A DNA stretch of 64,000 nucleotides from Adineta vaga. Lineage: Eukaryota > Animalia > Rotifera. Shown here in pieces: positions 1,843-61,050 of this stretch. Every line of letters begins with the position of its first letter. Within the stretch, counting starts at the first letter, position 1. Below the pieces are notes generated by a model that was not told the DNA's origin, did not search any database, and was given only the letters and a program-made list of their open reading frames with translations. The stretch is from positions 4,898,001-4,962,000 of the forward strand of contig CP075492.1 of assembly GCA_021613535.1 (NCBI GenBank), written 5' to 3'. A program made the position numbers and the translations under genes.

Positions 1843-2174
1843 TTTGATATTACTTACAGATGACCTGAAAATGAAAAGAACACGAAATTTATATGATGGT
1901 GTTTTATTCTTTCTTATCAAAAAGTAAATTAATCTTCATTTGAATAACCTTTTGACCAATAAAATAACAGTAGAAACCTGATGTAAAAGATGAATGTATA
2001 CGTATAATAAAAATTCTTTCTAAAGAGATTTTTTTATATAGATCAAATATTCATTCGAATAGATTAAAAAATAACTACGGATTTTATGATCAGATGTCAC
2101 TAGCCTTCGAAAAAAAGGGGTTACGCGATAGGTGACAAAAGGTTTTTTTTCTTATGTCGGTGAAGTCATTTCGT

Positions 2175-18360: not shown

Positions 18361-19443
18361 ATGGCTTCAGCTCCGGAAGAACTTAAACGTCATGGTCCAA
18401 CTGAAGGTTTATCTTTTCCACGTTCAAAAGCCGAACAATTATTTAAACATCATTTAAATAAAAAAATCAGTTGGTATGAAACAATTGAAGAAGGTTTGAA
18501 TAATTTTCTTGCTTTTGTTGATTGTGAAAATGATACACAACGGTATGTTCTGAAAATTTGTGGTGATGCTTGGGATAAAATCAAAACCGAATCTGAAGTT
18601 ACTGCTATGAAAGTTGTTTCTAAACATACAACACTTCCTATTCCAAAAATTATTGCTTATTCATCAGATAAAAATAATGAATTCGGTCTGGAATGGATTA
18701 TAATGACGCGTACAGAAGGAAAACCACTTCGAACATCACAACATGTTGGTGATATTTGGACAAAACTATCGATTGAACAGAAGAAAATGCTTATTAATGA
18801 ATTGGTTGATTATGTTAAACAATTACATTCACGAATACCATCAGCATCATTAATTGGAAATTATAGAAGTAATGATAAAATTGGATTTGATAATAGTCGT
18901 AAAGGTCCATGGAAAAACTATCGAGAATATTTTAATGATCAATTAAAAGATAAAATCGAAATCTTAACAAATGATAATGTATTTGCACCTGTTCGTGATG
19001 ATGTTCTTCAATCAATTAAAGAATTTCGAACGTTAAATTTGCCAACATTTGATGAACTTCCGAATGTTTTTACTCATAATGATCTTGGATTACAAAATTT
19101 AACTGTAAGTGATGATTTGAAAATTCGAGGAATTCTCGATTGGGAATGGTCCGGTTCGTATCCGATTGTCGAAGAATATTTTCGTTCATATAAACCGATT
19201 GTTTATGATGAACAAATGAAAACTTATCTTTTCGATCAATTAGAAAAACAACAAATTCCAACTCCACGAACAATACCACGGTTTTCACTTCTAAGAAAAC
19301 TCTATGATTTTCTACAAGCTATTGTTCCATGGTATCTAACGAGTTTAGCGAATCCGGAACATCCAACTGTAGAAAAAGAACTATTTAAAAATCGAGATAA
19401 AGTTGAACAACTCGTTAAAGAAATTCGAAAAGAATTGAAATAG
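18361..19443 (+). CDS. Aminoglycoside phosphotransferase (APH)/choline-kinase-like kinase, intronless
   Basis: YVLKI, SEVTAM, PIPKIIAY, Brenner motif FTHNDL...N, and ILDWEWSG. Confidence 0.88.
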   Translation: MASAPEELKRHGPTEGLSFPRSKAEQLFKHHLNKKISWYETIEEGLNNFLAFVDCENDTQRYVLKICGDAWDKIKTESEVTAMKVVSKHTTLPIPKIIAYSSDKNNEFGLEWIIMTRTEGKPLRTSQHVGDIWTKLSIEQKKMLINELVDYVKQLHSRIPSASLIGNYRSNDKIGFDNSRKGPWKNYREYFNDQLKDKIEILTNDNVFAPVRDDVLQSIKEFRTLNLPTFDELPNVFTHNDLGLQNLTVSDDLKIRGILDWEWSGSYPIVEEYFRSYKPIVYDEQMKTYLFDQLEKQQIPTPRTIPRFSLLRKLYDFLQAIVPWYLTSLANPEHPTVEKELFKNRDKVEQLVKEIRKELK

Positions 19444-31153: not shown

Positions 31154-31382
31154 ACAGAGATTTTTAGTTCGCAGTTTTTCTTTGACTATAATCTAGATTT
31201 TGAGTAAAGTTCTCCTTTTCTCGTTGATCACCAGTTATTTCGAATGTAGTGTACCAATTAAACTTTGCTACTAACTTTCATTTGTCATATTTGAAGAATA
31301 AAAGATAAACTGGTCTTCATTATCAGCACCTTAGATAAGAATCAGTTTGAATGTAAATGAATTTTATTCATCACATAGAAGA

Positions 31383-32906
31383 ATGTGGTTTGTATTCATA
31401 TTGACGATTCTTTTTCCATGTATTTTCGCAGGAAAATGTCCTGGTCAAGCATATTCTACACCATTTAATACATCATCATCGATTCTAACAAAACAATTAA
31501 ATGTTTTCTGGTCAATTTATGGTAATTGTGAAGAAAAGTTAGACACAAATGATAATCCATTTGGTGACAATCCTGCCTGGGCAGAATGGGATGCAATCAA
31601 ATTTAGTTGGAATAATCGAAATGGATATCGTGATCATGCTCAAGCAACATTATTTCGATTTCCAATTAATGGAATTGATGATACGAAAGGAAATATGTCC
31701 AAAGGTTTTCTCTGGTCATGGATGGATACAGAACAATGGCCTGATGCAAGAGGATCACATGGATCAATTGCTTCATATCATTTTGATCAATTACCACGAT
31801 TTCCTGTTGCGGTTTATCAGTATTATGCATGGACAGGTAATCGAACATTTCTTCATGCAATTTTACCACGAGTCGAATCTGTTATGACATATTTACTTAT
31901 AAATATGAATGGATCATTTGGAATTCCGATTAATAAGATAAATGATGGAACTGGTCGTCCAAGTACTTACATGGATCAAGTTAAATCTGGCTGGAAAGAT
32001 GCTTGGATATCCATGATCTTCTACACCGCTTTAACGAATATGATCGAACTAGAAAAAATCGTTGGTAATCAAAATCAAATGGAATATTATCAATCAGCAG
32101 CGAATAGTTTGAGTGAAGTATTTGATAGAACATTTTGGAATGAAAGTTTAGGTCGATATATTGGTTGGATAGATCGAAATGATTATCAGCATGATAGTGG
32201 TTATGTATTTATTAATCTCGAAGCACTTACGCGTGGTTTAGGAAATCAAACAAAAGCTGATCGAATCTTTCATTGGTTATCACAACCAGCGGATCCGATT
32301 CAAATCGGTCCACATAATGGTAGTACTGATATTTATCATAATGTTTTAGCAGCAAGAACAACAACACAAAATGTTGTGCAATCGGATTGGGATGGCTGGT
32401 CAGATCCTGATGAAGGACGAAGACCATATGGTGGCCTAGTTGAAAGTGGTGGAACAATGATTTGGTTAACTTATTATGATATTATGGCACGTCTTCGTTT
32501 TAATCATACAGATGAAGCATTTGAAATTTTAACACGAATGTTAGATCGAATTGATAACGATTCTTATTGTTTAACATTTAATTACGAAAAAGGTCGATAT
32601 AGAGATGATTTTGACGAAGATTTTGTTCAAATTGGAAGTAATTATCCATTTCCGGAATCAGGCATTGCTGTCGTTGCATTTCTTCATGGTTTTGTTGGTG
32701 TTCAAGCAAAACCTGATGGACTCTATATCTGTCCACAACTTCCATCCTTACTTAATTTTGCTCAAGCACAAATCGATTACGGTACATCAAACTTAACCAT
32801 TCAAGTAAGTAAACAAAATACACCGATGGTTTATTCTATTACTATACCAGAACGACAAATATCGGTGAATATTACTCCTGGTAGCTGTTACAATCTTTCT
32901 CAATAA
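31383..32906 (+). CDS. Secreted six-hairpin (alpha/alpha)6 glycoside hydrolase-like protein, intronless
   Basis: Signal peptide MWFVFILTILFPCIFAG. Motifs: YQYYAWTGNRTFL, YMDQVKSG, YTALTNMIELEKIVG, FDRTFWNESLGRY, and C-terminal GFVGVQAKPDGLYICPQLP, which resemble bacterial GH78/GH116-like enzymes. Confidence 0.75.
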   Translation: MWFVFILTILFPCIFAGKCPGQAYSTPFNTSSSILTKQLNVFWSIYGNCEEKLDTNDNPFGDNPAWAEWDAIKFSWNNRNGYRDHAQATLFRFPINGIDDTKGNMSKGFLWSWMDTEQWPDARGSHGSIASYHFDQLPRFPVAVYQYYAWTGNRTFLHAILPRVESVMTYLLINMNGSFGIPINKINDGTGRPSTYMDQVKSGWKDAWISMIFYTALTNMIELEKIVGNQNQMEYYQSAANSLSEVFDRTFWNESLGRYIGWIDRNDYQHDSGYVFINLEALTRGLGNQTKADRIFHWLSQPADPIQIGPHNGSTDIYHNVLAARTTTQNVVQSDWDGWSDPDEGRRPYGGLVESGGTMIWLTYYDIMARLRFNHTDEAFEILTRMLDRIDNDSYCLTFNYEKGRYRDDFDEDFVQIGSNYPFPESGIAVVAFLHGFVGVQAKPDGLYICPQLPSLLNFAQAQIDYGTSNLTIQVSKQNTPMVYSITIPERQISVNITPGSCYNLSQ

Positions 32907-33575: not shown

Positions 33576-36500
33576 CTTAAGATTCGTCTGGTCAAAATAC
33601 CGATTGTATCAAGGTCCATGTGCATTTGCACTATTTACATGCTTATCAATCGTTATTGGTGTATTGGTCGTATGTCTTACTTATCCAACTAAAAAAAGTA
33701 CGTTCTGACCTTTTACTTGACAGACGAATTTCTATAGAATATTGTTTAGATATTAAATGTGAATTTACGTTTATACGATCTGTTAAATCTCAAACTGGTT
33801 ATAATTCACATCCTAAACATGCTGCTGCTACTGATTTTAATCACGATGGAAATCAAGATATTATTATTGCTAATTCTGGTACTGATGATCTTAGTCTTTT
33901 CCTTGGTTATGGAAATGGATCCTTTGCAGACAAACTATCTCATCAATTAGCTGATAGATCTCAACCGTACGCAGTTGATATTGGAGATTTTAATAAAGAC
34001 AATCATTCTGATGTTGTTATAGCTAATTATGGCACTAATTCTATTGGTATTTTATTTGGTGATGGTCATGGATATTTTCGAAAGCAAAATATGATTTCAC
34101 TTGGATCATCTCGTCCAATTTATTTAGTTGTTGGAAATCTTAATCAAGATGATCAAATTGATATTGTTGTTGTTAATTCTGGTACTTTAACAGTAATGAT
34201 ATTAACAGGATATAATAATGGATTGTTTCGAATTGAAACAACTATTTACATGGGTTATGATTCAATTCCGACATCATTATTTATTGCAGATTTTAATCAT
34301 GATCAGAAATTTGATATTGCTGTTGTTAATTCTAATACGAATGAGTTTGTTTTACTTTTAGCAAATGGAAATCAAACTTTTCAAAGTATACAATGTTCAA
34401 CAGGAAAAAATTCTCATCCAAATTCATTAGCTGTTGGTGATTTTAATAAAGATGGTCAATTAGATATTGCCATTACTCAATCAGGAACCAATAATATTGG
34501 TATTTATTTTGGATATAACAATGGAACTCAATTTAAAACAGTATTACTTTCAACAGGAATTAGTTTTCGACCTTCATTTATTCGTGTTGTTGATTTGGAT
34601 AACGATACTTATTTAGATCTTGTTGTCATCGATACAACTTATGAAAAAATGAATGTATTTAAAGGTGGAAATAATGGAAGTTTTTCTTTGATTACAACAT
34701 ATTCCACTGGAATTGCTTCTAGTCCATCTGCAATTGTTATTGCTGATATTGATAATGATCATTTACCGGATGTTGTTATAACAAATAATGGAACAAATAG
34801 TATTACTATTTTGGCTAAATATATTACTTATCCAAATACACAACAAACATACTATCCAACTGGAAGTGATTCTGAACCATCTAAGGTTGCCGTTGGAGAT
34901 TTTAATCATGATCATCATCTTGATATTATTGTTATTTATGATCAAAGAACTTCGATTGATATTTATATCAATTCTGGTAATGGTAGTTTTGAGAATCAAA
35001 TGATCTATGATATATTAATTCAATCAGAATATAACTCTTTATCAGTTGCTGATTTGAATAATGATACTCATCTCGATATTGTTATATCAGTACATAATAC
35101 AAGTGAAATATTTACACTCTTTGGTAATGGAAATGGAACGTTTAGATTCGGGAAAATATATTCAATAGGAAATAATTCTTCGCCATTATCCGTCACTATT
35201 GGTCTTCTAAATGATGATATGTATTTTGATATTGTTACAGCTAATTTAAATACGAATAGTATTGGAATATTCTTTGGATATGGAAATGGAGATTTCATGG
35301 AAGTTAAGACACTCTATATTGGTAATAATACTGGTCCAGCATGTGTCTATATAGGCGACGTAAACAGAGACAATATATCGGACATAGTTACAGCTAATTT
35401 AGAAGGTAGTAGCATATCGATTCTCATTGGATATGGCAATGGACTCTTTTATGATCCTATCATTATTTTGACTGTAGATGATAATCCAATGTACATTATA
35501 CTTGGTGATGTAAATCAAGATCGTCAAATGGATATCATATATACTTCGACAACGTCTGCTACAATTGCTGTACTTTTAGGAAATGAAAATGGTACTTTTG
35601 AACATGTAAGCAAATATTTTACTGGTTACGGATCATTTCCACGAAGTGCAATTTTATGTGATTTTAATAATGATACTCTTATAGATATCGTAGTGATCAA
35701 TAGTTTTGATAATAATATAGGTGTTTTGCTAGGTTTGGGCAATGGATCTTTTGCTATGCAAAAAATATATCCTCTGCAAGGTGTACTATATCCACAATAC
35801 ATTGCTTTTGGTGATTTTAATGATGATAAACAAGTAGATTTTGTTCTCAGCAATGCACTATTGGATAATATTGGTATTATTCTTGTCTATTATGAAGAAA
35901 ATTTTACAAAAGAAACAAGTTATTCAACAGGATCTGGTTCACATCCTTATTCGCTTGCTATAGGTGATTTAAATAATGACAAGCAAGTAGAACTTGTTGT
36001 AGCAAATTCCGGCAATGATAACATTGAAATACTTTCTGATTATGATCAAGGAATTTTTCTAAAAAAAGTTCGATATTCAACAGGTTTTAATTCACGCCCA
36101 CAATTCGTTGTCATTGCTGATTTTAATCAAGATGATCGAAAAGATATCCCTGTTGCTAATGTATTATCTGAAACTATCAGTATCTTTTATAATCTTGGTA
36201 ATGATACATATGACGTACCAATTTCACTTTTCCTTGGTTCTGGATCTTCACCTCGTTCGATAGCTATTGGTGATTTTAATTCTGATAATAGATCAGATCT
36301 TGTTATAGCAGATTATGGAACTGATCAAATCGCTGTATTTATTGCTTATAACTATGTTACATTTGTAAACTATACGATTTACAAACGTGAACTAGTTCCA
36401 GTGGTGAAGCATATTGTAGCCGGTGATTTCAATAATGATCATCAATGGGATATTATCGTTCCCGATGAAAACTATGGTAATATAGCTGTCTATTTGGGAT

Positions 36501-38047
36501 ATGGAAATCGAACATTTGCTAAGCCACTTGTACATTCGACAGGTTCAGATTCTTCACCAGTTTTTATTGCTGTCGGATATTTGAATAAGGATAAGAATCT
36601 GGATATTGTTATTATAAACTCAGGTTCAAACAATATTGATGTATATCTAGGAAATGGTAACGGAAGTTTTGGTATCCGAACGCCCTACTCAGCGAACGAC
36701 TCATCGATTCCATCATCAGTTGCGCTCGGTGATTTTAATTCTGATAATATAACAGACATCGTTGTCGCGTATAGTGCTATCGATAGTATAGGTATTTTTC
36801 TAGGCAATGGAAATGGAACATTTACTATGGAACCATTACATAAATTACCCGATGAGTCTAGACCATCATGTGTGATAGTAAATGATGCAAATAATGATCA
36901 TATTCAAGATATAATTGTTGCTAATATGAACGAAGAAACTATTAGTATCTTTTCTCGTACTAACAATGGTACTTTAAAAAATATAGTAACGTATGTACTC
37001 GACGACGGTGCTCAACCTTCTTCTATTGCTGTAGGTGACTTTAACAAAGATGGATGGATGGATATAGCCGTTCCAGAATACGAACGTAATAGTATAGGTA
37101 TAATGACGACTATTTCCAATGGTAATCTTGAAAACATAGCACATTATATAATTCATCAAGCTGTAGTCATGCAATCAATCTATGTTGCTGATATAAATAA
37201 TGATACAAACTTAGACGTTATTGTGATTTGTTTCGATGGAGAAAATGGAACGATTTATATCATTTACGGATTTGGCGATGGTAATTTTACAATGCCAACC
37301 GTTTATTCAACTCCTCGATTTTCAGGTCCAACATCAATAGCAATTGTTGATTTTGATAATGATGGTCGAATGGATTTTGCAATTAGTAATTATGTCAAAG
37401 GAAATATATTCTTGATGTTTCAACAAACATATCAACAATTTGTTACACCATGGCTATTCTCGACCGGAACTGGTTCTCGTCCTATTTTTGTCATGACAAG
37501 TGATTTTAATAACGATTATAACATAGATATTGCTGTTGCCAATTCTGCTACTAACAGTATTGATATTCGTCTTGGTATCGGAGATGGAACTTTCTATCCT
37601 CAAAAAACGTATTCTACTGGTAAGAATTCTCGACCATGCGCCATGAGTGTAGGTGATTTCAATAATGATGCACAATTAGATATTGTTGTGGTTAATTCTG
37701 ATGGAAATAATATTCTAATTCTTTTTGGTGATGTTGATGGTAATTTTTCATATGGATTAACGTATTCAACAGGATCAAGCTCAGTTCCTTCATCGATTAT
37801 TACTATGGATTTGAATAAAGACAATCGATTGGATATTATTATTGGTAATTTTGCTGCAAATAAAATTCTTGTATTTTTAGGTGCACAAAATGGAACGTTC
37901 AGAGATGCACAATCCTATTCTGTTGATTATAATGCTCATCCACAATCTATTGCTATTGTAGATGTGAATAATGATGGTTTATTAGACATTGCAGTTGCTA
38001 ATTCTAACGCTGATTATATTGAAATTCTTTTACGACCATGTTCATAA
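33576..38047 (+). CDS. Large FG-GAP/VCBS repeat protein with an N-terminal TM anchor (5' start uncertain)
   Basis: Dozens of GDFNxDxxxDIxVxN...G.GNG.F repeats in one exon of ~4.3 kb. An upstream exon (33576-33697) encodes a TM segment, AFALFTCLSIVIGVLVVCL. Confidence 0.92.
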
Positions 38048-49044: not shown

Positions 49045-50842
49045 TCATTGAAATAACGAGAAAACAACGCGAAAATCAATGGAGTGTCGAAACATTGTTT
49101 CAATCTCGCCAATCTTTGTTAAAATTTCTTCATCATCTCGCTTCATATCCACAACTCGTAATGTCACCTTTGCTAGAGCAGACGGATACTCGATTATTCT
49201 CTTCCATCTGTTGACATCCAACAAATTCTTGATATTGTATCTATTTGTAATCACATCAACACAACGAATTCCGTTCATACGCTTGATCAAATCAACAATC
49301 ATCATTAATAAACATGATGGATAGTTGCGCGAACAATTTTCTATACCAACTGCTGCAAATTTACTCATATCGACGGTTAAATACTCAATAGAATAATTCT
49401 GGTTGAAGTTTTCTAATACATCATTTCCAATACCATGAACACACAATGCGCCTGCACAATGTATTTTAAGTTGTTTGATTCTTTGTGGCAATTCTCCCCT
49501 GATCGTACTGATTACATGAAGGGCTATTTCGCTGTCGTACCAAAGTGAAACACAAGTCAAATATGTCAACGACATTACATTCCTAATGATTTCATTCACA
49601 TTATGAAAATTCACAAGTGAGATTGATCTAACATTGTTGTATATTGATAACGTCGGTTTAGTTTGATTTAACATTAAATCTTCTGATCTAAGTTGTAATG
49701 AAACAATTTGTGTTGAATCGATTTTTCGAAGCAACATCTCCATAAACATTGTAGAATGTTCAACCATTGGTAGTTTCTTCTTCTTCAATCTTCGAAATAA
49801 AGGAATGATATTTGGTGAGAATGCATTGATCGCATCGTTGAATGAAAGATATTTCATTATTTCGAAGATGATTTCTTCACGACCACCAACTTTAGACATC
49901 AAATTCATTGACTAAAAATAAAAACCGACATTTCCCTCTTTTCATCAGTAATCGAGTACAATAAACTTACTAGACTCTGTTCATTTTCATTCGTTTCTTT
50001 TCGAAAAAGCATCAATTGTTCCAGCAATAGTTTAGAAGTGACTGCATTTCCATTGTGTGTCCATATACTTTCTTTGATTAATAGGTCATAGCCGTATTCA
50101 ATCGTCGACAATTTATCTTTATTCTCGAACAATCGCCGGATGCCAATGAGTGTAGGATATTGATTTTTAAAAGCGTTTTCAATCGGATCATTACGAAACA
50201 TTTGTTTCCAAAATTCGATGAAACTAGAGACCGGAAGAAAAGCAATTAGAATTGAAGATATGTTTGTGACTAACCTAGTTTTATTTGATTGATGTGTAAT
50301 ATCCCATGGCCACACGATATAATTATCGAGTAAATAGTCTATGATGATCGAAGAACAGAATGTTGTTGAACAGAAGATATTACTGAAACAGCTTTTATTA
50401 TCATGAATGTAGATCAACAATGGACGACGCTGAAATAGAATAAAATGATGATTTGTTTTATGGAAAGAGAAGTACATACTTCTTGAACCGTTGAAGGACT
50501 AAATGCAGCATCAAGTGCTTCTCGGAGAGATCCCGTAAAGAAAACTGGGCATGCGTCATATCGTTGCAGAAAACATTTACTCATAGCTTCAATACCGGCT
50601 GTTTCATCTTCACAATTGTCGGGAACTTTGAAATAACAAACTCAATCATTAAATGTAATGAGAAAAGACTGATCGACATACATGAACTATATAAGACATC
50701 TTGCTGAAAATTATCGTCATCTGCGTCAGATAAATTATCATTGATTTCGTCCGTATCATCATCCTAAATGAATTCAGATAAAATAGTATATTTACCTTAA
50801 GAATCAATCTTTTTAAGAAACTATAAAAGCTACATTTACCAT
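49045..50842 (-). CDS. UAS (FAF1-type) domain fused to an F-box-like/LRR-like module, paralogue B
   Basis: ATG-only first exon (50842-50840) and an acidic exon, then PDNCEDETAGIEAMSKCFLQRYDACPVFFTGSLREALDAAF / RRPLLIYIHDNKSCFSNIFCSTTFCSSIIIDYLLDNYIVWPWDIT. An intron after NEQSL joins to EEIIFEIMKYLSFNDAINAFS. Confidence 0.78.
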
Positions 50843-51747: not shown

Positions 51748-52866
51748 ATGCGATCTATAACTGTTTTTGTTCTATTAATTTGCGCAAGTCAATCACGAAT
51801 TTTGCTACCAACTATTCGACACTATTTTGATAAATTAACCGAATCAAATGATGATTCTTTCATTACTAGTTTATATGAATATTATCAAATGCAATACCAT
51901 CCAAATCGACCCATGGCTCGATCCGATGCAGAAAAATATATTCGAATAGAAAGTTTCAAAGAAAATTTCAAATTTATTACGGAAACAAATAACAACGAAG
52001 AGAATTCATTTAAATTAGGTTTGAATAAATTCACTGATTGGACATCAAATGAACTTGATCAGCATACCGGTCTGATTCCTGACAAATTCACTCATGTTTC
52101 TTCACGTTACGATTTTGATCCATTACCCGACACGGAAAAATATTTTCCGTCAAATAATTATAATTATGATGCATGGGATTGGAGCGCACATCATGTAATT
52201 TCTCGACCAAAAAATCAAGGTCGATGTGGAAGTTGTTATGCATTTGCATTTGCCGGAATGCTTGAAGCGAATTATGCTATTCGACAAGGTACAACCGAAG
52301 ATTTTAGTGAACAACAATTTGTAGATTGTGCCGCTTTATTCGGTTGTCGCGGAAGTAATTTCATTCCATGTTTCAATTATATGAAATCGAAACATTGGTT
52401 TACTCAATTGACCACTCATTATCCATATACAGCCGTCGTTCAATCATGCCCTGCAACGCATTTGAATGGAATTTATCTCGGTGAAAAGTTATACAAACGT
52501 GTACCGATGAATGATGAAGAAATCTTGAAAGTACTTCTCCGAAAATATGGACCTATTTACATTTCATTGAATGTTGGTAATCAAGCAAACGAATCAACAC
52601 TTCTGACAAATATTTCAAAGAAATTTAATGCTTATTCTCAAGGTATTTTCGATGTATCAGGTTGTAGTGATCAACCGCGACAAAATCATGCTATGCTTTT
52701 AGTTGGATATGGTCACGATCGAATAACAGGTTTAGATTATTGGAAAGTGAAAAATTCATGGGGACATACATGGGGAGAAAATGGATTTATTCGTATAAGA
52801 CGCGGTGTGAATATGTGTGGTATTGCTGCGGATGCTTATTACATTGGATCAGCTCCATTCATTTGA
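51748..52866 (+). CDS. Papain-family (C1A) cysteine protease, cathepsin L-like, intronless
   Basis: Signal peptide, I29 prodomain (ERFNIN-like; GLNKFTD), and catalytic motifs QGRCGSCYAF, NHAMLLVGYG, YWKVKNSWG. Confidence 0.95.
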   Translation: MRSITVFVLLICASQSRILLPTIRHYFDKLTESNDDSFITSLYEYYQMQYHPNRPMARSDAEKYIRIESFKENFKFITETNNNEENSFKLGLNKFTDWTSNELDQHTGLIPDKFTHVSSRYDFDPLPDTEKYFPSNNYNYDAWDWSAHHVISRPKNQGRCGSCYAFAFAGMLEANYAIRQGTTEDFSEQQFVDCAALFGCRGSNFIPCFNYMKSKHWFTQLTTHYPYTAVVQSCPATHLNGIYLGEKLYKRVPMNDEEILKVLLRKYGPIYISLNVGNQANESTLLTNISKKFNAYSQGIFDVSGCSDQPRQNHAMLLVGYGHDRITGLDYWKVKNSWGHTWGENGFIRIRRGVNMCGIAADAYYIGSAPFI

Positions 52867-53004: not shown

Positions 53005-56000
53005 TTACCAAAATGGACACCAGCCAAGATAAGATCTAAAAGATAAATTCAAAGAATTCCTTTTAAAAAATAAAATTCATACTGGCAAAGATTTTCATGA
53101 CTTGTCGCTTGTTTTATAAGTAATTCAACTTGTGTTGAAATATCAACAGGTTCTTCACGATGAAAATCATTTCCTATTAATTTATCTCGAACACGATTTA
53201 TTACTTCAACTGTTTGTATATCAATATTTTGTTTTTGATTTTGTTGAGTCGACCCATGTTCATCTACTAAACGCCAATTCAGTAGAGGATCATGTATAAA
53301 TGCTTCTAATACAGTCATAAGACTATCACGATTTGTTCTTAATACACCCATAACATGTTCACATGTCATACGAAATGTTCCATCAATTCCTGTAATTTCC
53401 ATTGCTTTACATAACATTCGTGTTAAACGAAAAGGAACTCTTTCAGCAAATTTTTCTCGTTTCATAGCTATTTCAAAACAATCACCAAAATCTATATGAA
53501 CCACTTTTCCACTCGTATGATCAAGCATTAAATTTGACAGATGACGATCACCTAAACCCAAAATATATCCAACCTAAAAAAAACGCAAATACAATGATAT
53601 ATATATATATATCCATATTCATAATCTCATTCTTTTACCATTGACATAATAGCTAATGATTTTGTGTAATTTGCTCTTCTAACTAACCATATTTCTGCAC
53701 TTGAACTTGTATACCAAAGAATTTTTGCTAAATCATTACCTTTTAAAAGACTAATTGCATATTCAAATATTTCAATTTTATTTATTAAGGGTAATTGTTC
53801 ATAATGTGCTGTTTCTTTTTGAATATGACGACATTCAATATCGTAAACAATCCCTGCTTTTTCACGGTAATCTTTGATTAATGTATGAAATGTTTCACAT
53901 TGTGTTACCCAACCAAGTAGACCAGTATTTAATGCTAATGGTATGACAGGATAACGTTGAATATTAAAATTTTGTCGACGTGTTTCTTCATTTACTGAAA
54001 GAAATTCATTAACTAAACCGAATAATTGCATGACACGTTCATCTTGCCGTAAATCTTCATGTCCTTTTAATAAAAATACATATTGAAAACCATCTGAACC
54101 TTGCATACTAATTTTTCTTGGTCGCTGTTTCGATGTTATAATTTTTATCTGAGAATGCATATTTTGAATAGTTATTGAGGGTTTATATGGTTCATATGTC
54201 CCTGGTACAGCTAATTCTAGATCTCGACAATGTGTAGTTAATTCTAAAAATATTTTTCAAAACAAAAACTATAAGATCTGAATCGATTTACTCTTACGTG
54301 GAGAAACTTGATCTAATTCCAAAGATGTCATATTTCGTAATTGAGTATGAATACGTTGATATACTTGAAAATAAAGTTGAAAAGCGAGTTGAAATTCAAG
54401 TGGATTTCTCGTTCGATGAAAACTACAAAGATTATCATAGGCTTGACGTAAATCATTTGCGTATAAATCAACAAAACTACGTTCGCTTAACGTTGTACAT
54501 TCAAAATTATTTTCAGAATGCAATAATATTAATGCATTTATCATACCTACAACATTTTTATGTTGTTCATATTGGTTTATTGCATTCGCTAAACCATCAT
54601 ACCATTTTTCGTGCCATAATATGGAAATTCGGATTAATTCATCACTGACAATAATAGCTTGTTGTACAAGAACAGAACTATGTCCTTTCATATGATTTAG
54701 AACAATATTCGCGGCAACTGATCGTTCACGAACAACTGATTTCGATGCAACAACCAATGGATAAATCAAAGCTTGAGAATGTTTCTGACCAATATTCATC
54801 AATAGACGTTGAATAAATTGACGAATTAATAGTTCTGATGAATCAATACGTGCAATTAATTGTGGTAAAACTTGTAGCCATACCTCAATTGGTACTTCAT
54901 GAATACCTTCGTTAATTATATCATAAACTTCTTGATATTGTCCATATTCAAATAAAAGTGTTAATAAACGAAGTGTATCTTGCAAACAATGTTTAGATTT
55001 CGATAGTACAATTGATTTTAATAAACTTTTCATCGATGAGATTGTACAATGTATTATTTTAATTTCTGATTGTGAATTCATTTCATTGGATTGTTTCAAA
55101 TGATTGATTGTTTCATAATTGAATACAGCATGAGCATTCCATGCTTTGTGATTTGATTCATCATAGGTACATGCATGTTCATAATTCTTCATTATTTGAT
55201 CTATTATATCATCATTCGTCATACCAAAAAGTTCATGTTGCCATGTACCTAATCGTAAGTAACATTTGGATGTTAGTTGACGAAAATGTTGTTCATTTTG
55301 ATTTGTATGAAGAGTTTGTTTCGATAAACATCTTTTATTAATCATTTCTTTCACATCATCTAATAATTTCAATTGATCTTGATGATTTTGTTCAAGTTTT
55401 AGATTGATATTCTCAATATTTGCTGGTATGATAGAATTTACATTCAGTAAAGCTTGTTTTCGAATTTGCCGTTGAGATAAAAGACGTTCACGTGATTTAA
55501 TCAAACAATGCCAATCATATTTAGCTTTTTCATATTGAATTACTACTGCATGATAATCTCGATTTTGATCTGTTGAATTTGTTTTTACTAATTGTTTGAA
55601 AATCCATTCTGCCATGATTAAACGATTCGATCGATGACAAAGATTAGCTAATTTAATCCATAATTGAAGATCTTCTCTCATTGGTAAACATAATGAATGT
55701 GTTAATAATGAACGATGATAATCATCAACAATTGGTTGATTTCCTTGTAAACGTTTTTGCCATATAGTACAAATCAATGGCCGACGTTCAGGATTAGTTT
55801 TATACGTCCATACTTCTTCTAATTCGGATAATAATTGAGTATTAATCATCGCTAGAATAACAAAAAAATCCAGATTAGAAATCAACTCATTGAATTTTCT
55901 ATACCTGAATATGCTCGATTATAACTTTCATTTGTTAATGTTGTTAATTCTTCATCTAGTAATTCTCTTGCTAAATCAATTGAATCATATGCTTGCCGAT

Positions 56001-59000
56001 AATTATCATTTCGAATTGCATTGATTGCACGATAATAAATACCTTCAAATTTTGTATCTGATATATGAAGAGAATATTTTTCCATATCAGTTAGATTTCC
56101 TACACTCCATGCTGCACGTGTAGCAATTGGTGCAATTGTTTCTTGAAGAACTTGTCTCAATTCAATTGTATTAGTATATTTTTCAATTAAATTTGTTGTA
56201 AATGGTAAATTTTTTTGATCATTATGAATCTGTTCAGTTTGATTCCATAAATGATTTGTTAAATTTCTCAATTCATTCCATGATCCAAGTGCTTGCATAC
56301 ATCTCATTCGTCCGAGATTGTTTTCGAAATTCAATGGATCATTTACATGAATAGATTCGTAATGTCTTAGTGCACGTTCCCATTGATTTAATTTTTCATA
56401 CCAAAGATCTTTGATTTCAATCTGATGAATTTTCGCATATGCTAATGCACCATATGCAGCTTCGGATTGTTGTAATTCATAATTAATACTTATTAACGAT
56501 TCAACAGTATCTGAAGTTACCAATGAAGATTCTTGTTCGTTTTCAAATTCAGTTTCTTGATATCGTAAAGCTTTGGCATAAGCTCGAACTGAAATAGCTT
56601 TTTTGATTAATAAATGAGTATCAATCAATGATTGATTGGAATTTTCATCGATTAGATTTGCTTTTCGTAATTTTAAATAACAATGATCATAAAATTCAAC
56701 TAAATTCAATATGATTTGTATTACATCGGCTTTTTCACATACAGATAAAACGTATGTTAAAATTTCTGTTAAACTTGATCGATCTTCAGCATTCAAAACA
56801 CTCCAACAAGAAACAAAGGATACATTGAATAGATCTTTTGAAATCGATGAAGAATGTTCAGCTAAACAAGTACCCATTGCACGTAATGAATAGATCGGTG
56901 ATTGTTCTAAAACAAGTTGTTGAAATTTATTGAACCATGTGGATATATCGATTGTATTTCCAGGCATTGCTTGTAACCAATGTTCTCTCAATCGTTTTGT
57001 ACGTATTGTATATAAAATCGAAGGACTATTTACAATCGATGCTGCAGAAGATGTTAGATTCGGAGTTTCATTGGCGATCGTTGGAATATCAACTGATGAT
57101 GAGTCTTTTAATTTTGAGATAAATAATTCATATTTAGGATATTGTAAATTCATTTCATTCATGATTTTAGAAATAGATGGATGAAAGATAAGAAAATGTT
57201 TACCCATATGTTGTGCTAAGATACAGATAAGATCTAAACATTGGATTTGTAATTCGAACGTATGACGAAGAATTGTTAATAATGCTTGAATTATACCGGA
57301 TATGTGATCATTTATGAAAACTTTGTCAACTAATTGTTCAAATGTAATCAATGCTTCGTTTCGTAATTGATTTGAATTTTCATCATCCGATGCGATATGT
57401 AAGATTTGTAATAAAACAGTATTTAAATAAGGTTTTGATTTTGTATCGAATTTATATAATATTAAAAACATTCGTGATAGAATCAATTGTCGATTATCTT
57501 TTTCTTTTATGGATAAATTCGTTGTATTTATACATAATATTTTCAGAATAAATGGTAATAATAAATGAATATATTCATGGCATCTATCACCTAATGCCAT
57601 AACTAATGATTCAGTTGTGTGGAGAAGTAAAATTTGTAATTCAATATTCGTATTCCAATACTTCTCAATCAATTGAAGAATATCATTGATAAATGGTACA
57701 ATCGAAATTTTAATTGAAAGTATAATTAAGTTCATTTGATGACAAAATGGAATTAAATTTCTCTGATCTGTATTATGTACAATAGATAATAAACATGGAA
57801 ATACCAATGAAACATATTGTGTAGAATTATTTCCAAGCCATTGAAAGATTTTTGTTAAACTTTGAAGAGATTTTAAATGTAAATGAAGATGATTCGAATC
57901 TTTGAGTATACGAAGAGAAGAATAGATGACGATCGAAGTATAGAAATCAGGTAAAGATTGATTGGTAGATGTAATTATTAGTTCATTCGAAGATAATTCA
58001 ATTGGATCGGATTTATTTCGAAGACGATGAATTAACGTGATGTCATTTACATCAAATGAATCATTCGAAGATCGAATATGATAAGGATCAATAGCACCGA
58101 TAAAACCAAGAAGACGAATTGTTTGACGACGAACTGAAATTTCATCAGATTTTAAAAATTTTAATAGAATATCAAGTAAAATAGGATAGTCTTTCAATGG
58201 ATCAATTACATAACAACAACTTTCAATTATTTGTCCAGTAGTCCATAGAGCTACTTCACGTTTACGAATATTTGATGTATCCTGAAGCATATTTATCAAT
58301 ATAGGAAATAAATCATGAATGTGTTCATGAAAACCAATACTACAGATGTGGGCATAATCACCAATTGTTCGAATTAAAGTAATAAAAGCATTCGAATGTT
58401 GTTCAGATCGTTTGATTAATCTTAATAATACCTAAAACAATTGGAAATATGTCGTCTGTCTTTCTTTCTATAAAAGATAAACTTTCGATTATGCCTACTT
58501 GAGTGATTATTTTCATATATGCTTTAACAATTCTCGGTGTATTTGTAATTAATTGTCCTAATAATCTTAGTGTTTGTTCTGTTTCACTTAGTGGACGTTC
58601 GATAACTAATTGAGTTAATAATTGATATAAGACGTGTTTTAATCGTGGTAAAATATATCCTGGATTGAGATTTGATAAACGTCCAAGTAGACTTACTGCA
58701 AGTTCATTTATTTCCTGACTTTGATCATTTATTGAATAGAATAATAATTCCAATACTTCAGATTTTACAAGAAATTCGTTAAAATTATCGTACAAGGTCA
58801 AAAGAACATTATAACGCACATCAGGATTTGAATCAGTAACACTAATGTTTAATAATATTTGAATAATCAAACTGATTTTTAATCGTATTTTATTCATTGA
58901 AGCGATGAATGGTAATAATTTTTGTAATAAATGTGTTATTATTTTGATTGATTCAATTCGGATATGTACATTGTCATGTTGAATGAAATGACAGTGGAGT

Positions 59001-61050
59001 GTATCAATAAATGTTGGTTCAATAGCTTGAATTTCAAAATTGAACATTCGAAATGTTTCTAAAGCGATTAATATCAAATCAAATTGATCTTTGGATAAAT
59101 TTGATTGATATGCTAATGGATTGCAGAGAATTAAACGAAGATTTTCTAATAAACCTTGATAGATTCTCTGTTTGAATTCAGTTACAATCCATGGCATTGA
59201 ACATAAATTTTTTAAACAGATTAATAAAGAATGATTTAATTGGCAATTTAATAAGTATTCTAATAGATTATTCAAATATTTCGATGTTTCTCGACCTGCT
59301 CCACCAATCAATGTTATACAGGCAAATATACTCGCATCAGGCAATGAATATCGACAGGATAACGAATTCTCATTTGAAATAAACGTTTGTTTTAAACATG
59401 CAATGGTTTTAGTCATATATTTGGTTACTATGTGATGATCGGAATCTAAACGAATCATTAAACCTAATGCATGAAATGCTAATTGACGTTGATTTAATTC
59501 CGAAGAATTGATTTCATCGAAAATGAAATTCATTGTTGGTTCAATGTATGATTTTTGAGAAAAGAATTCGTAATCTAATGATGCTAAACGTGGTAAAATA
59601 CGAATTAATACATTGGCAATTAGAAATGATAGTTGATGAAGATATGGAAAGATTTGATGACAAGTTTCATGAAGATTTTTTAACAAAATTGAACGCATTA
59701 GAGATGATTGAACTTGTATTGATGATTGATTAATATTATCCATGATATTGATGGGTGATAAAGGATCTGTCTGTTCAGATGTTAAAGCAAGACGAGAACG
59801 ATGAATATCCTAAGAAAATATACATCTCTTTTCAATTCGTTATCATATACGATATAATTATTTTACTTTATAAGAAAGTCGTTTCGATTTCGATGGATTA
59901 TTACTTAAAGTTTGACAAATATTCTATAAGCAAGCATTCATTATTGAAAATTCGATATTTTTACTAATGAATCATCTTACTTCAAATTGAATATCTGATA
60001 CTCGTAGCAATTCATTCAATAATAACAGTCCGCCATGAATTTCATCTTCATTTTGATTATTTTCCAAACATGCCATTGATTCTTTATAAGCCATCTAAAT
60101 CAACAAGATTCAATGAATGGAAACAAAAAACTATAACATTTTCAAAACAAACATGATATGCTGGAAGAAATGTTTCATCTTCATGATCAATCAATACAAT
60201 CAATGTTGCTTTCATTGTTTCAGCAAATGCTTCACGAATGTATTGCTAAATTCAATGAATAAATCATAGAAAAACATCACTTCATAATTTTACCTCTGAA
60301 TCGATCATTGTATTAAAAAGTTGTTCAAAATATTGTTCAATGGGTGTTATCAAATGATAATAACGTAATGGTGCTGTAATAGCAATTTCTTTTAGAATTT
60401 GTATTCCAGTATAACGTCGTATTTCATGTCTTTCTTCAGGTGAAATATATTCCAATGCTTTAAGAATATCCAATGAAAATCGATCAACATTCAATCGATC
60501 ACAACCCTAGATTGAATTGAATTTGGAATAATAACAAATATGACAAGTAAATCTCTATACTTTAACAAGAAGACATGTTAGTTTGACAAGTAATTCACAT
60601 AGATTTGGATCGACAGACATTTGCTTGTAACCACGTAATGTTGTTTCTAATTTATTACTTAATTCAGTATAAAAATTTTGTCCAGCACAAATAAAACAAA
60701 CTATAAATATATATTGGGTACAGAGAACTATAGCTTTTGGATAAAAACATACGAATAACAAGAAGTGCGGCACGATTTTCATTGATAGCATTGGGATTAC
60801 TCATTTTCTGTCGAACAAAAATTTGAATTTCAGCAACAAGATTTTGAACAACATCTGGTAGCACCTTTTCACATACAAAATATTCATTTATTCTAATCGA
60901 ATAAGAATCTTTACTTACATCGATATATTGTGCAATAATGCGTTCGTAAAGATCATTAGTTGCTTGTCGACGTATATCTTCATTCGAACTTTGTAAATCA
61001 TCGATAAACTGTTCTAATAGAGTAGAAAATCGAGTATCTGATACACACAT
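53005..61050 (-). CDS. mTOR: Target-of-rapamycin (TOR) kinase, divergent, multi-exon
   Basis: HEAT region ([40 protein letters not shown]), FAT ([30 protein letters not shown]), FRB (ILWHEKW), kinase ([36 protein letters not shown]) and FATC ([14 protein letters not shown]). Confidence 0.95.

What the first reader, a model, noticed from the sequence alone, without database searches (positions are those of the whole stretch)
54345..54625. TOR with a natural rapamycin-resistance FRB (Ser2035->Ile equivalent and a remodelled pocket)
Seen: the FRB reads [20 protein letters not shown]...[17 protein letters not shown]. Aligned by eye to recalled human mTOR ([20 protein letters not shown]...KDLTQAWDLYYHVFRRI), Ser2035 is Ile (codon 54580-54578). 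Other pocket residues also differ: F2039E, T2098Q, W2101F, Y2105F, F2108Y. Known: Ser->Ile at this site is the classic substitution that blocks FKBP12-rapamycin binding in mTOR and yeast TOR. The kinase catalytic motifs and FATC are intact. Inference: this is an active, rapamycin-insensitive animal TOR, probably a divergent paralogue. It could buffer against macrolides from soil actinomycetes or recruit different substrates, since FRB also gates substrate access.
Basis: partly seen in the sequence, partly recalled or inferred. Interest (0 to 1): 0.9.

Follow-up and report, generated by a model that had tools for sequence, protein, structure and literature searches.

The report
Bdelloid TOR duplicates with rebuilt gate
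A bdelloid rotifer carries a second, spliced copy of the growth-control kinase TOR whose rapamycin-binding surface has been rebuilt, and two other rotifer lineages appear to have done the same independently, which points to a repeated and still unknown selective pressure on one of the most conserved drug targets in animals.

Summary
Observation confirmed. The window is Adineta vaga; the gene is TOR paralogue I4U23_012201 (13 exons, spliced in two RNA-like data sets, catalytic residues intact). A gap-free alignment to mTOR gives S2035I, F2039E, T2098Q, W2101F, Y2105F, F2108Y, plus E2032A, R2036N, G2040Q, D2102Q. A canonical TOR with Ser exists elsewhere in the genome.

New here: pocket-remodelled duplicates also occur in A. 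ricciae (syntenic), three Rotaria species and A. steineri. Third-position trees reject one origin (AU p=3e-7; RY-coded 0.005), so probably three duplications. The 12 pocket codons never change on canonical branches (dN/dS 0) but show dN/dS 4.4, 18 and 7.5 on the three post-duplication stems (p≤4e-4 each; my own codon model). The LBE helix facing the FRB is the other hotspot; rapamycin does not contact it. The A. steineri copy keeps Ser2035.

Best reading: a re-gated TOR with changed substrate or regulator docking, rapamycin-insensitive as a by-product (0.45). Rivals: escape from a pathogen protein (0.2) or from soil macrolides (0.2). No binding or kinase activity was measured. No paper or earlier scan note on it was found.

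The parts
53005..61050 (-). Divergent TOR gene, 13 coding exons, 12 introns of 47-67 nt, 2459 aa (A. vaga I4U23_012201 / UJR07918.1, P0169)
   Evidence: 2454 of 2459 codons map exactly; Pfam; source name
55906..61050 (-). Exons 1-9: N-HEAT, M-HEAT, mTOR domain and start of FAT
54299..55852 (-). Exon 10: rest of FAT and the whole FRB
   Evidence: flanking introns spliced in RNA-like run X9
54347..54640 (-). FRB four-helix bundle, fold retained (pLDDT above 90 over most of it)
   Evidence: Pfam PF08771 E 1.4e-23; AlphaFold with alignment; TM 0.92 to mTOR for the FRB-kinase-FATC model
54578..54580 (-). Ser2035-equivalent codon, ATA = Ile
54563..54589 (-). FRB helix 1 face: E2032A, S2035I, R2036N, F2039E, G2040Q
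   Evidence: hotspot window 2031-2044
54359..54391 (-). FRB helix 4 face: 2098Q, W2101F, D2102Q, 2105F, F2108Y
   Evidence: hotspot window 2095-2108
53636..54241 (-). Exon 11: kinase N-lobe (catalytic Lys at 54067-54065) and LBE
53816..53860 (-). LBE N-terminal helix (mTOR 2256-2270); top hotspot across the three lineages, N2262D in all three
53484..53549 (-). Catalytic loop DRH..N and DFG, intact
53214..53264 (-). Shortened negative-regulatory (NRD/PRD) linker, about 53 aa shorter than in canonical A. vaga TOR
   Evidence: 39 vs 92 aa over mTOR 2420-2505; paralogue contigs carry 215 letters in place of 56
53008..53153 (-). FATC, split by a 47-nt intron (53082-53036)
   Evidence: joint 53035/53083 in runs X9 and X19
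51748..52866 (+). Papain-family cathepsin gene, tail to tail; synteny marker only
   Evidence: same neighbour in A. ricciae loci L001 and L004

Best explanation
The gene is a functional, neofunctionalised duplicate of TOR. Soon after duplication, positive selection rebuilt the walls of the catalytic cleft: the FRB face that docks substrate helices and inhibitors (S6K, 4E-BP, PRAS40, DEPTOR linker, Rictor/Sin1), the LBE helix opposite it, and the negative-regulatory linker, which was largely deleted. The catalytic core stayed conserved. The likely result is a TOR that no longer answers to the usual FRB-docking partners and phosphorylates a changed or less gated set of targets, while canonical TOR keeps the ordinary job. 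Rapamycin binds the same face, so insensitivity (about 0.93 likely on its own) follows as a by-product. Shown: sequence changes, paralogy, splicing, selection pattern, recurrence. Inferred: kinase activity, loss of binding, de-repression, identity of partners.
For: Pocket dN/dS is 0 on canonical branches, 4.4 on the Adineta stem (p 3.5e-4) and then 0.37 in the Adineta crown (p 0.009): a burst followed by renewed constraint. Stems in Rotaria (18) and A. steineri (7.5) agree. The pooled stem value is 8.2 (p 1.5e-10), against a maximum of 1.19 in 157 random invariant-site sets; a published 10-residue list gives 4.1 (p 4e-5). Unbiased windows rank LBE 2255-2272 first, then FRB helices 1 and 4, then FATC. 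Twelve sites changed in all three lineages, against 1.3 expected naively or about 4.9 after allowing for site tolerance (p 0.005). FRB, LBE/LST8 and the PRD helix together form the cleft that restricts substrates (PMC7619004). FRB docks S6K, 4E-BP and PRAS40 helices (PMC6325617; PMC7464330). Deleting NRD 2430-2450 raises activity (PMC10793652). Pro at the 2260 position occurs in two Rotaria and one A. ricciae duplicate, and L2260P is part of a constitutively active mTOR (PMC13142245).
Against: No biochemical data. New residues differ between lineages, so no common new docking motif is visible. The Rotaria and A. ricciae tips keep changing at about neutral rate (dN/dS 1.1-1.4), which also fits escape from an antagonist. 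The LBE window was chosen after seeing the data, and it is not significant on the Adineta stem (1.5, p 0.27). Helix k-alpha9b itself is retained. No duplicated partners (Raptor, Rictor, LST8, S6K) could be checked. The Adineta stem value depends on the tree: 1.8, not significant, if a single origin is forced.
Confidence: 0.45

Rival explanations
1. Escape from a pathogen protein (effector or pseudosubstrate) that binds across the FRB and LBE walls of the cleft. Duplicates act as antagonist-proof back-ups, as kinase PKR does against viral mimics (analogy from my own knowledge).
For: The same rim residues (2028, 2032, 2036, 2040, 2098, 2102, 2261-2265) are hit in three lineages with mostly different new residues. 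Polar rim residues plus a second wall suggest a protein-sized ligand. Turnover continues among Rotaria species.
Against: No such effector was identified. dN/dS falls below 1 in the Adineta crown and is not above 1 in the Rotaria crown, unlike a running arms race. Canonical TOR shows no change at all at these sites.
Confidence: 0.2
2. Resistance to rapamycin-class macrolides from soil and moss actinomycetes. Pocket changes block FKBP12-drug binding; LBE and NRD changes compensate for lost substrate docking.
For: The window protein alters all three sites selected by rapamycin in yeast (S1972I, W2038, F2045; PMC5656752), and Rotaria sp. Silwood-1 has W2101L exactly. Rapamycin lowers reproduction in monogonont rotifers (PMC7903245). 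Duplicates were seen only in desiccating, largely terrestrial or temporary-water species.
Against: One dominant substitution is enough in yeast, yet 8-11 of 12 sites changed. The A. steineri duplicate keeps Ser2035 and Trp2101 although TCA to TTA is a single C-to-T step. F2039 to Glu, Thr, Pro or Ser should damage S6K and 4E-BP docking, making a poor stand-in. Exposure in nature is unknown.
Confidence: 0.2
3. Relaxed selection: redundant copies simply lose constraint on surfaces and loops, and the pocket drifts.
For: Whole-gene dN/dS is raised in the duplicates (0.17-0.6, and 1.0 on the short Rotaria stem). Disordered loops are trimmed. Substitutions in Adineta and Rotaria overlap about twice as often as chance everywhere.
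Against: Pocket dN/dS is significantly above 1 on three stems under two site lists, with two frequency models agreeing at clade level. In A. steineri 6 of 12 pocket sites changed against 13 of 860 elsewhere (p 4e-8). The A. vaga copy has kept an open frame over dS above 1 from A. ricciae.
Confidence: 0.1
4. Complex partitioning: the duplicate lost the FRB contacts needed for Rictor/Sin1 and became a single-complex kinase, as yeast Tor1 is.
For: Rictor and Sin1 contact the FRB (PMC10903481). TOR2-specific FRB and kinase determinants matter for TORC2 (PMC9282017).
Against: Yeast Tor1 and Tor2 both keep the pocket. A TORC1-only kinase would still need FRB substrate docking.
Confidence: 0.05

Closest known systems
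mTOR/TOR (PIKK family), canonical animal TOR including A. vaga I4U23_007067
   Same: HEAT-FAT-FRB-kinase-FATC architecture, catalytic residues, most intron positions, fold (TM 0.92)
   Different: 10 of 12 pocket residues changed; LBE helix changed; NRD linker and several loops deleted (2459 vs 2882 aa)
Laboratory rapamycin-resistant alleles (yeast TOR1 S1972I/R, W2038L/C, F2045L; mTOR S2035I)
   Same: Same positions; Ser to Ile is identical
   Different: Natural, in a retained second gene, with many more changes on the same face plus LBE and NRD
Duplicated TORs of fungi (Tor1/Tor2) and Entamoeba (EhFRAP/EhTOR2)
   Same: Paralogues retained side by side
   Different: Pocket residues are conserved in all fungi examined (PMC2997006) and mostly in Entamoeba (PMC8391992); here they are under positive selection
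Engineered hyperactive mTOR (NRD deletion; V2198A/L2216H/L2260P/I2017 quadruple mutant)
   Same: NRD shortened in the window gene; Pro at 2260 in Rotaria and one A. ricciae copy
   Different: The window gene has Val at 2260 and keeps V2198, L2216, I2017 and helix k-alpha9b; activity not measured

Membership tests
TOR kinase | HEAT-FAT-FRB-PI3K-like kinase-FATC order | tested here: met
   Pfam
TOR kinase | Closer to TOR than to SMG1, ATM or ATR | tested here: met
   PDB E 1e-48 vs SMG1 4e-4; Foldseek; nests inside bdelloid TORs
TOR kinase | Catalytic Lys, DRH..N, DFG and C-terminal FATC | tested here: met
TOR kinase | Protein kinase activity; assembly with Raptor, Rictor, LST8 | not testable with these tools
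   needs biochemistry
Rapamycin-sensitive TOR | S2035, F2039, W2101, D2102, Y2105, F2108 pocket | tested here: not met
   list in PMC8391992
Rapamycin-resistant TOR | No FKBP12-rapamycin ternary complex | not testable with these tools
   inferred from yeast alleles
Pseudogene or pseudokinase | Broken frame, no transcript, or lost catalytic residues | tested here: not met
   intact model, spliced joints, kinase C-lobe dN/dS 0.06
Ohnologue from bdelloid tetraploidy | Lies in a block syntenic with the canonical locus and predates the bdelloid radiation | tested here: inconclusive
   no shared neighbours; branches inside the ENA and Didymodactylos copies at 99/100; a translocated ohnologue is not excluded
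Retrocopy | Introns lost | tested here: not met
   12 introns, at positions matching the canonical gene

The most novel reading that the evidence does not exclude
Bdelloid rotifers have at least three times evolved a second TOR that escapes a natural external antagonist of the rapamycin site (a rapamycin-class macrolide or a pathogen protein), which would be direct evolutionary evidence that this drug pocket is a contested surface in wild animals.
Probability: 0.4. Interest if true: 0.9.

Novelty: new variant of a known kind. Interest (0 to 1): 0.74.

Why it matters
The FRB face is nearly invariant across animals and fungi, and animals usually have one TOR (own knowledge). Why it is conserved, and whether rapamycin-like compounds matter ecologically for animals, are open questions. 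Three probable independent duplications, one very young (dS 0.058, 44 amino-acid differences), give natural matched pairs. The A. steineri pair reduces the question to about six FRB and five LBE substitutions that can be tested one at a time. The duplicates are also candidate natural rapamycin-insensitive or de-repressed TORs, seen so far only in desiccation-tolerant species.

Tried and rejected
Misalignment at Ser2035: rejected, the alignment has no gaps. Sole TOR of the genome: rejected. Pseudogene and retrocopy: rejected. Single origin of the Adineta and Rotaria duplicates: the protein tree suggests it, but third positions, synonymous-only and RY-coded data reject it, and protein data do not reject the alternative (AU 0.36). 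Gene conversion in Rotaria could still mimic independence. Single-sequence AlphaFold failed (pLDDT 35). The first full-length tree timed out and one search is the quick tree only. Two primary mTOR structure papers were not held, and no paper on residues 2261-2265 was found, so the position of the LBE helix rests on reviews and my own knowledge. Literature searches for bdelloid TOR and for natural FRB selection found nothing relevant. Scan notes had no TOR, FKBP, Raptor or LST8 entry. No monogonont TOR appeared in the listed hits.

Full report
Observation. The minus strand from 61050 to 53005 encodes a TOR. Pfam finds mTOR_dom, FAT, FRB, kinase and FATC. The stretch 54880-54272 aligns without gaps to mTOR 1935-2129, which fixes the numbering. 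Codon 54580-54578 is ATA, so Ser2035 is Ile. All catalytic residues and the FATC end are intact. An AlphaFold model built with a 65-sequence alignment keeps the four-helix FRB (mean pLDDT 84.6) and matches mTOR at TM 0.92.

Identity and expression. The gene equals the stored model P0169, Adineta vaga I4U23_012201. Codon tables for dN/dS were built inside scripts from stored proteins and loci. Contigs of two RNA-like runs from separate studies skip the predicted introns (53035/53083, 54243/54298, 55851/55905, 53571/53637), and the DNA run shows none of these joints. The run type is a database guess, and contigs cannot give expression level. The same runs hold a second TOR, about 86% alike in the kinase region. 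This matches I4U23_007067 (2882 aa), which keeps the pocket apart from the bdelloid-wide His at 2098 and 2105. The two loci share no neighbours.

Relatives. A. ricciae has two tandem orthologues in the same gene neighbourhood, with Leu at 2035. Rotaria sp. Silwood-1, Silwood-2 and R. sordida have a second TOR with Leu at 2035 and 7-9 of 12 pocket sites changed. One A. steineri assembly holds a young copy next to its own dynein light chain gene, with dS 0.058 to the canonical gene and 44 amino-acid differences. Six of them are pocket sites, and Ser2035 is kept. Four N-terminal fragments in two sequence groups from what appear to be the same assemblies suggest a duplicate rather than an allele (inference). 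All six species are desiccation-tolerant (PMC7943196). Didymodactylos, also desiccating, showed two canonical pockets only.

Origins. The protein tree joins the Adineta and Rotaria duplicates. Third positions reject this (AU 3e-7), as do synonymous-only columns (0.014) and RY-coded sites (0.005). Protein data do not reject a Rotaria clade (0.36). Loop deletions have different ends in the two groups. I therefore count three duplications. Two is the minimum, since the A. steineri copy is independent on any tree. No monogonont outgroup was available; trees were rooted on Didymodactylos.

Selection. Among sites invariant in six canonical bdelloid TORs, pocket changes are 10/12 in A. vaga (background 22%), 9/12 in Silwood-1 (11%) and 6/12 in A. 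steineri (1.5%), with p from 1e-5 to 4e-8, and they exceed the rest of the FRB in every lineage (p≤0.008). I wrote an MG94-type branch model with site partitions fixed in advance. The 12-site list came from my recollection of the rapamycin contacts, so I repeated the test with a published 10-site list (PMC8391992). Pocket dN/dS is 0 on canonical branches. On the stems it is 4.4, 18 and 7.5 (12 sites) or 3.2, 8.2 and 4.2 (10 sites; p 0.006, 0.009, 0.048). It then falls to 0.37 in the Adineta crown and 1.4 in the Rotaria crown. Random invariant sets never exceed 1.19. A species-like tree gives the same result. A forced single origin fits worse and spreads the signal so that the Adineta stem is no longer significant. 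Short stems and uneven GC3 (0.06-0.33) make the point values imprecise; an earlier fit gave 2.1 for the Adineta stem.

Beyond the pocket. The top unbiased hotspot is the LBE N-terminal helix, followed by FRB helices 1 and 4 and the FATC. Twelve sites changed in all three lineages: six on the FRB face and six at 2248-2274. The A. vaga copy has also lost about 53 residues of the negative-regulatory linker. These are the elements that reviews describe as restricting the active site (PMC7619004; PMC10793652). The FRB face is also the docking site for S6K, 4E-BP, PRAS40, DEPTOR and Rictor/Sin1.

Mechanism. A burst on the gate, a conserved catalytic core and later constraint fit best with a duplicate selected for changed docking or release from inhibitors (0.45). 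An external antagonist is the main alternative, either a pathogen protein (0.2) or a macrolide with compensating changes (0.2). Yeast selected in rapamycin hits the same three residues, but one change suffices there, and the youngest duplicate changed rim residues instead. Drift alone is unlikely (0.1). Rapamycin insensitivity of the window protein is likely under all of these readings, but it was not measured.

Verdict. Real, and not found described. It is a new variant of TOR, and the recurrence is the main result. Interest 0.74.

Noticed in passing
L009:3001-11172 (ENA metagenome contig): A bdelloid-like canonical TOR has no introns over 2723 codons yet still lies beside the dynein light chain gene; A. 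steineri canonical TOR (L006) also lacks six introns found in its relatives.
   Followed up: partly
P0171-P0177, FRB: All canonical bdelloid TORs carry His at 2098 and 2105, where other animals have Thr/Asn and Tyr; this may already alter rapamycin or phosphatidic acid binding.
   Followed up: no
L001 and L004 (A. ricciae contig CAJNOJ010000594.1): Tandem segmental duplication with two divergent TORs, about 88% identical in the FAT-FRB region, that differ at 4 of 12 pocket sites.
   Followed up: partly
L013:1-16683: The Rotaria sp. Silwood-2 duplicate is annotated as two genes, but the split falls at a conserved intron position.
   Followed up: yes
FAT loop near mTOR 1810-1860: A Pro/Ser-rich loop with a PPSP motif, present in most canonical bdelloid TORs, is deleted in all three duplicate lineages with different ends.
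   Followed up: partly
FATC, mTOR 2541 equivalent: Ser to Leu occurs in both the Rotaria and the A. steineri duplicates.
   Followed up: no
window 18361-19443 (+) and 31347-32906 (+): Long single ORFs with APH/choline-kinase-like and GH116/rhamnosidase-like domains; possible horizontally acquired genes.
   Followed up: no
window 49045-50477 (-): A FAF1-domain gene lies between the cathepsin and the 218-aa LRR gene; it has no match in the syntenic A. ricciae loci.
   Followed up: partly
window 33620-38047 (+): A 1475-aa single ORF with 22 FG-GAP-like repeats.
   Followed up: no
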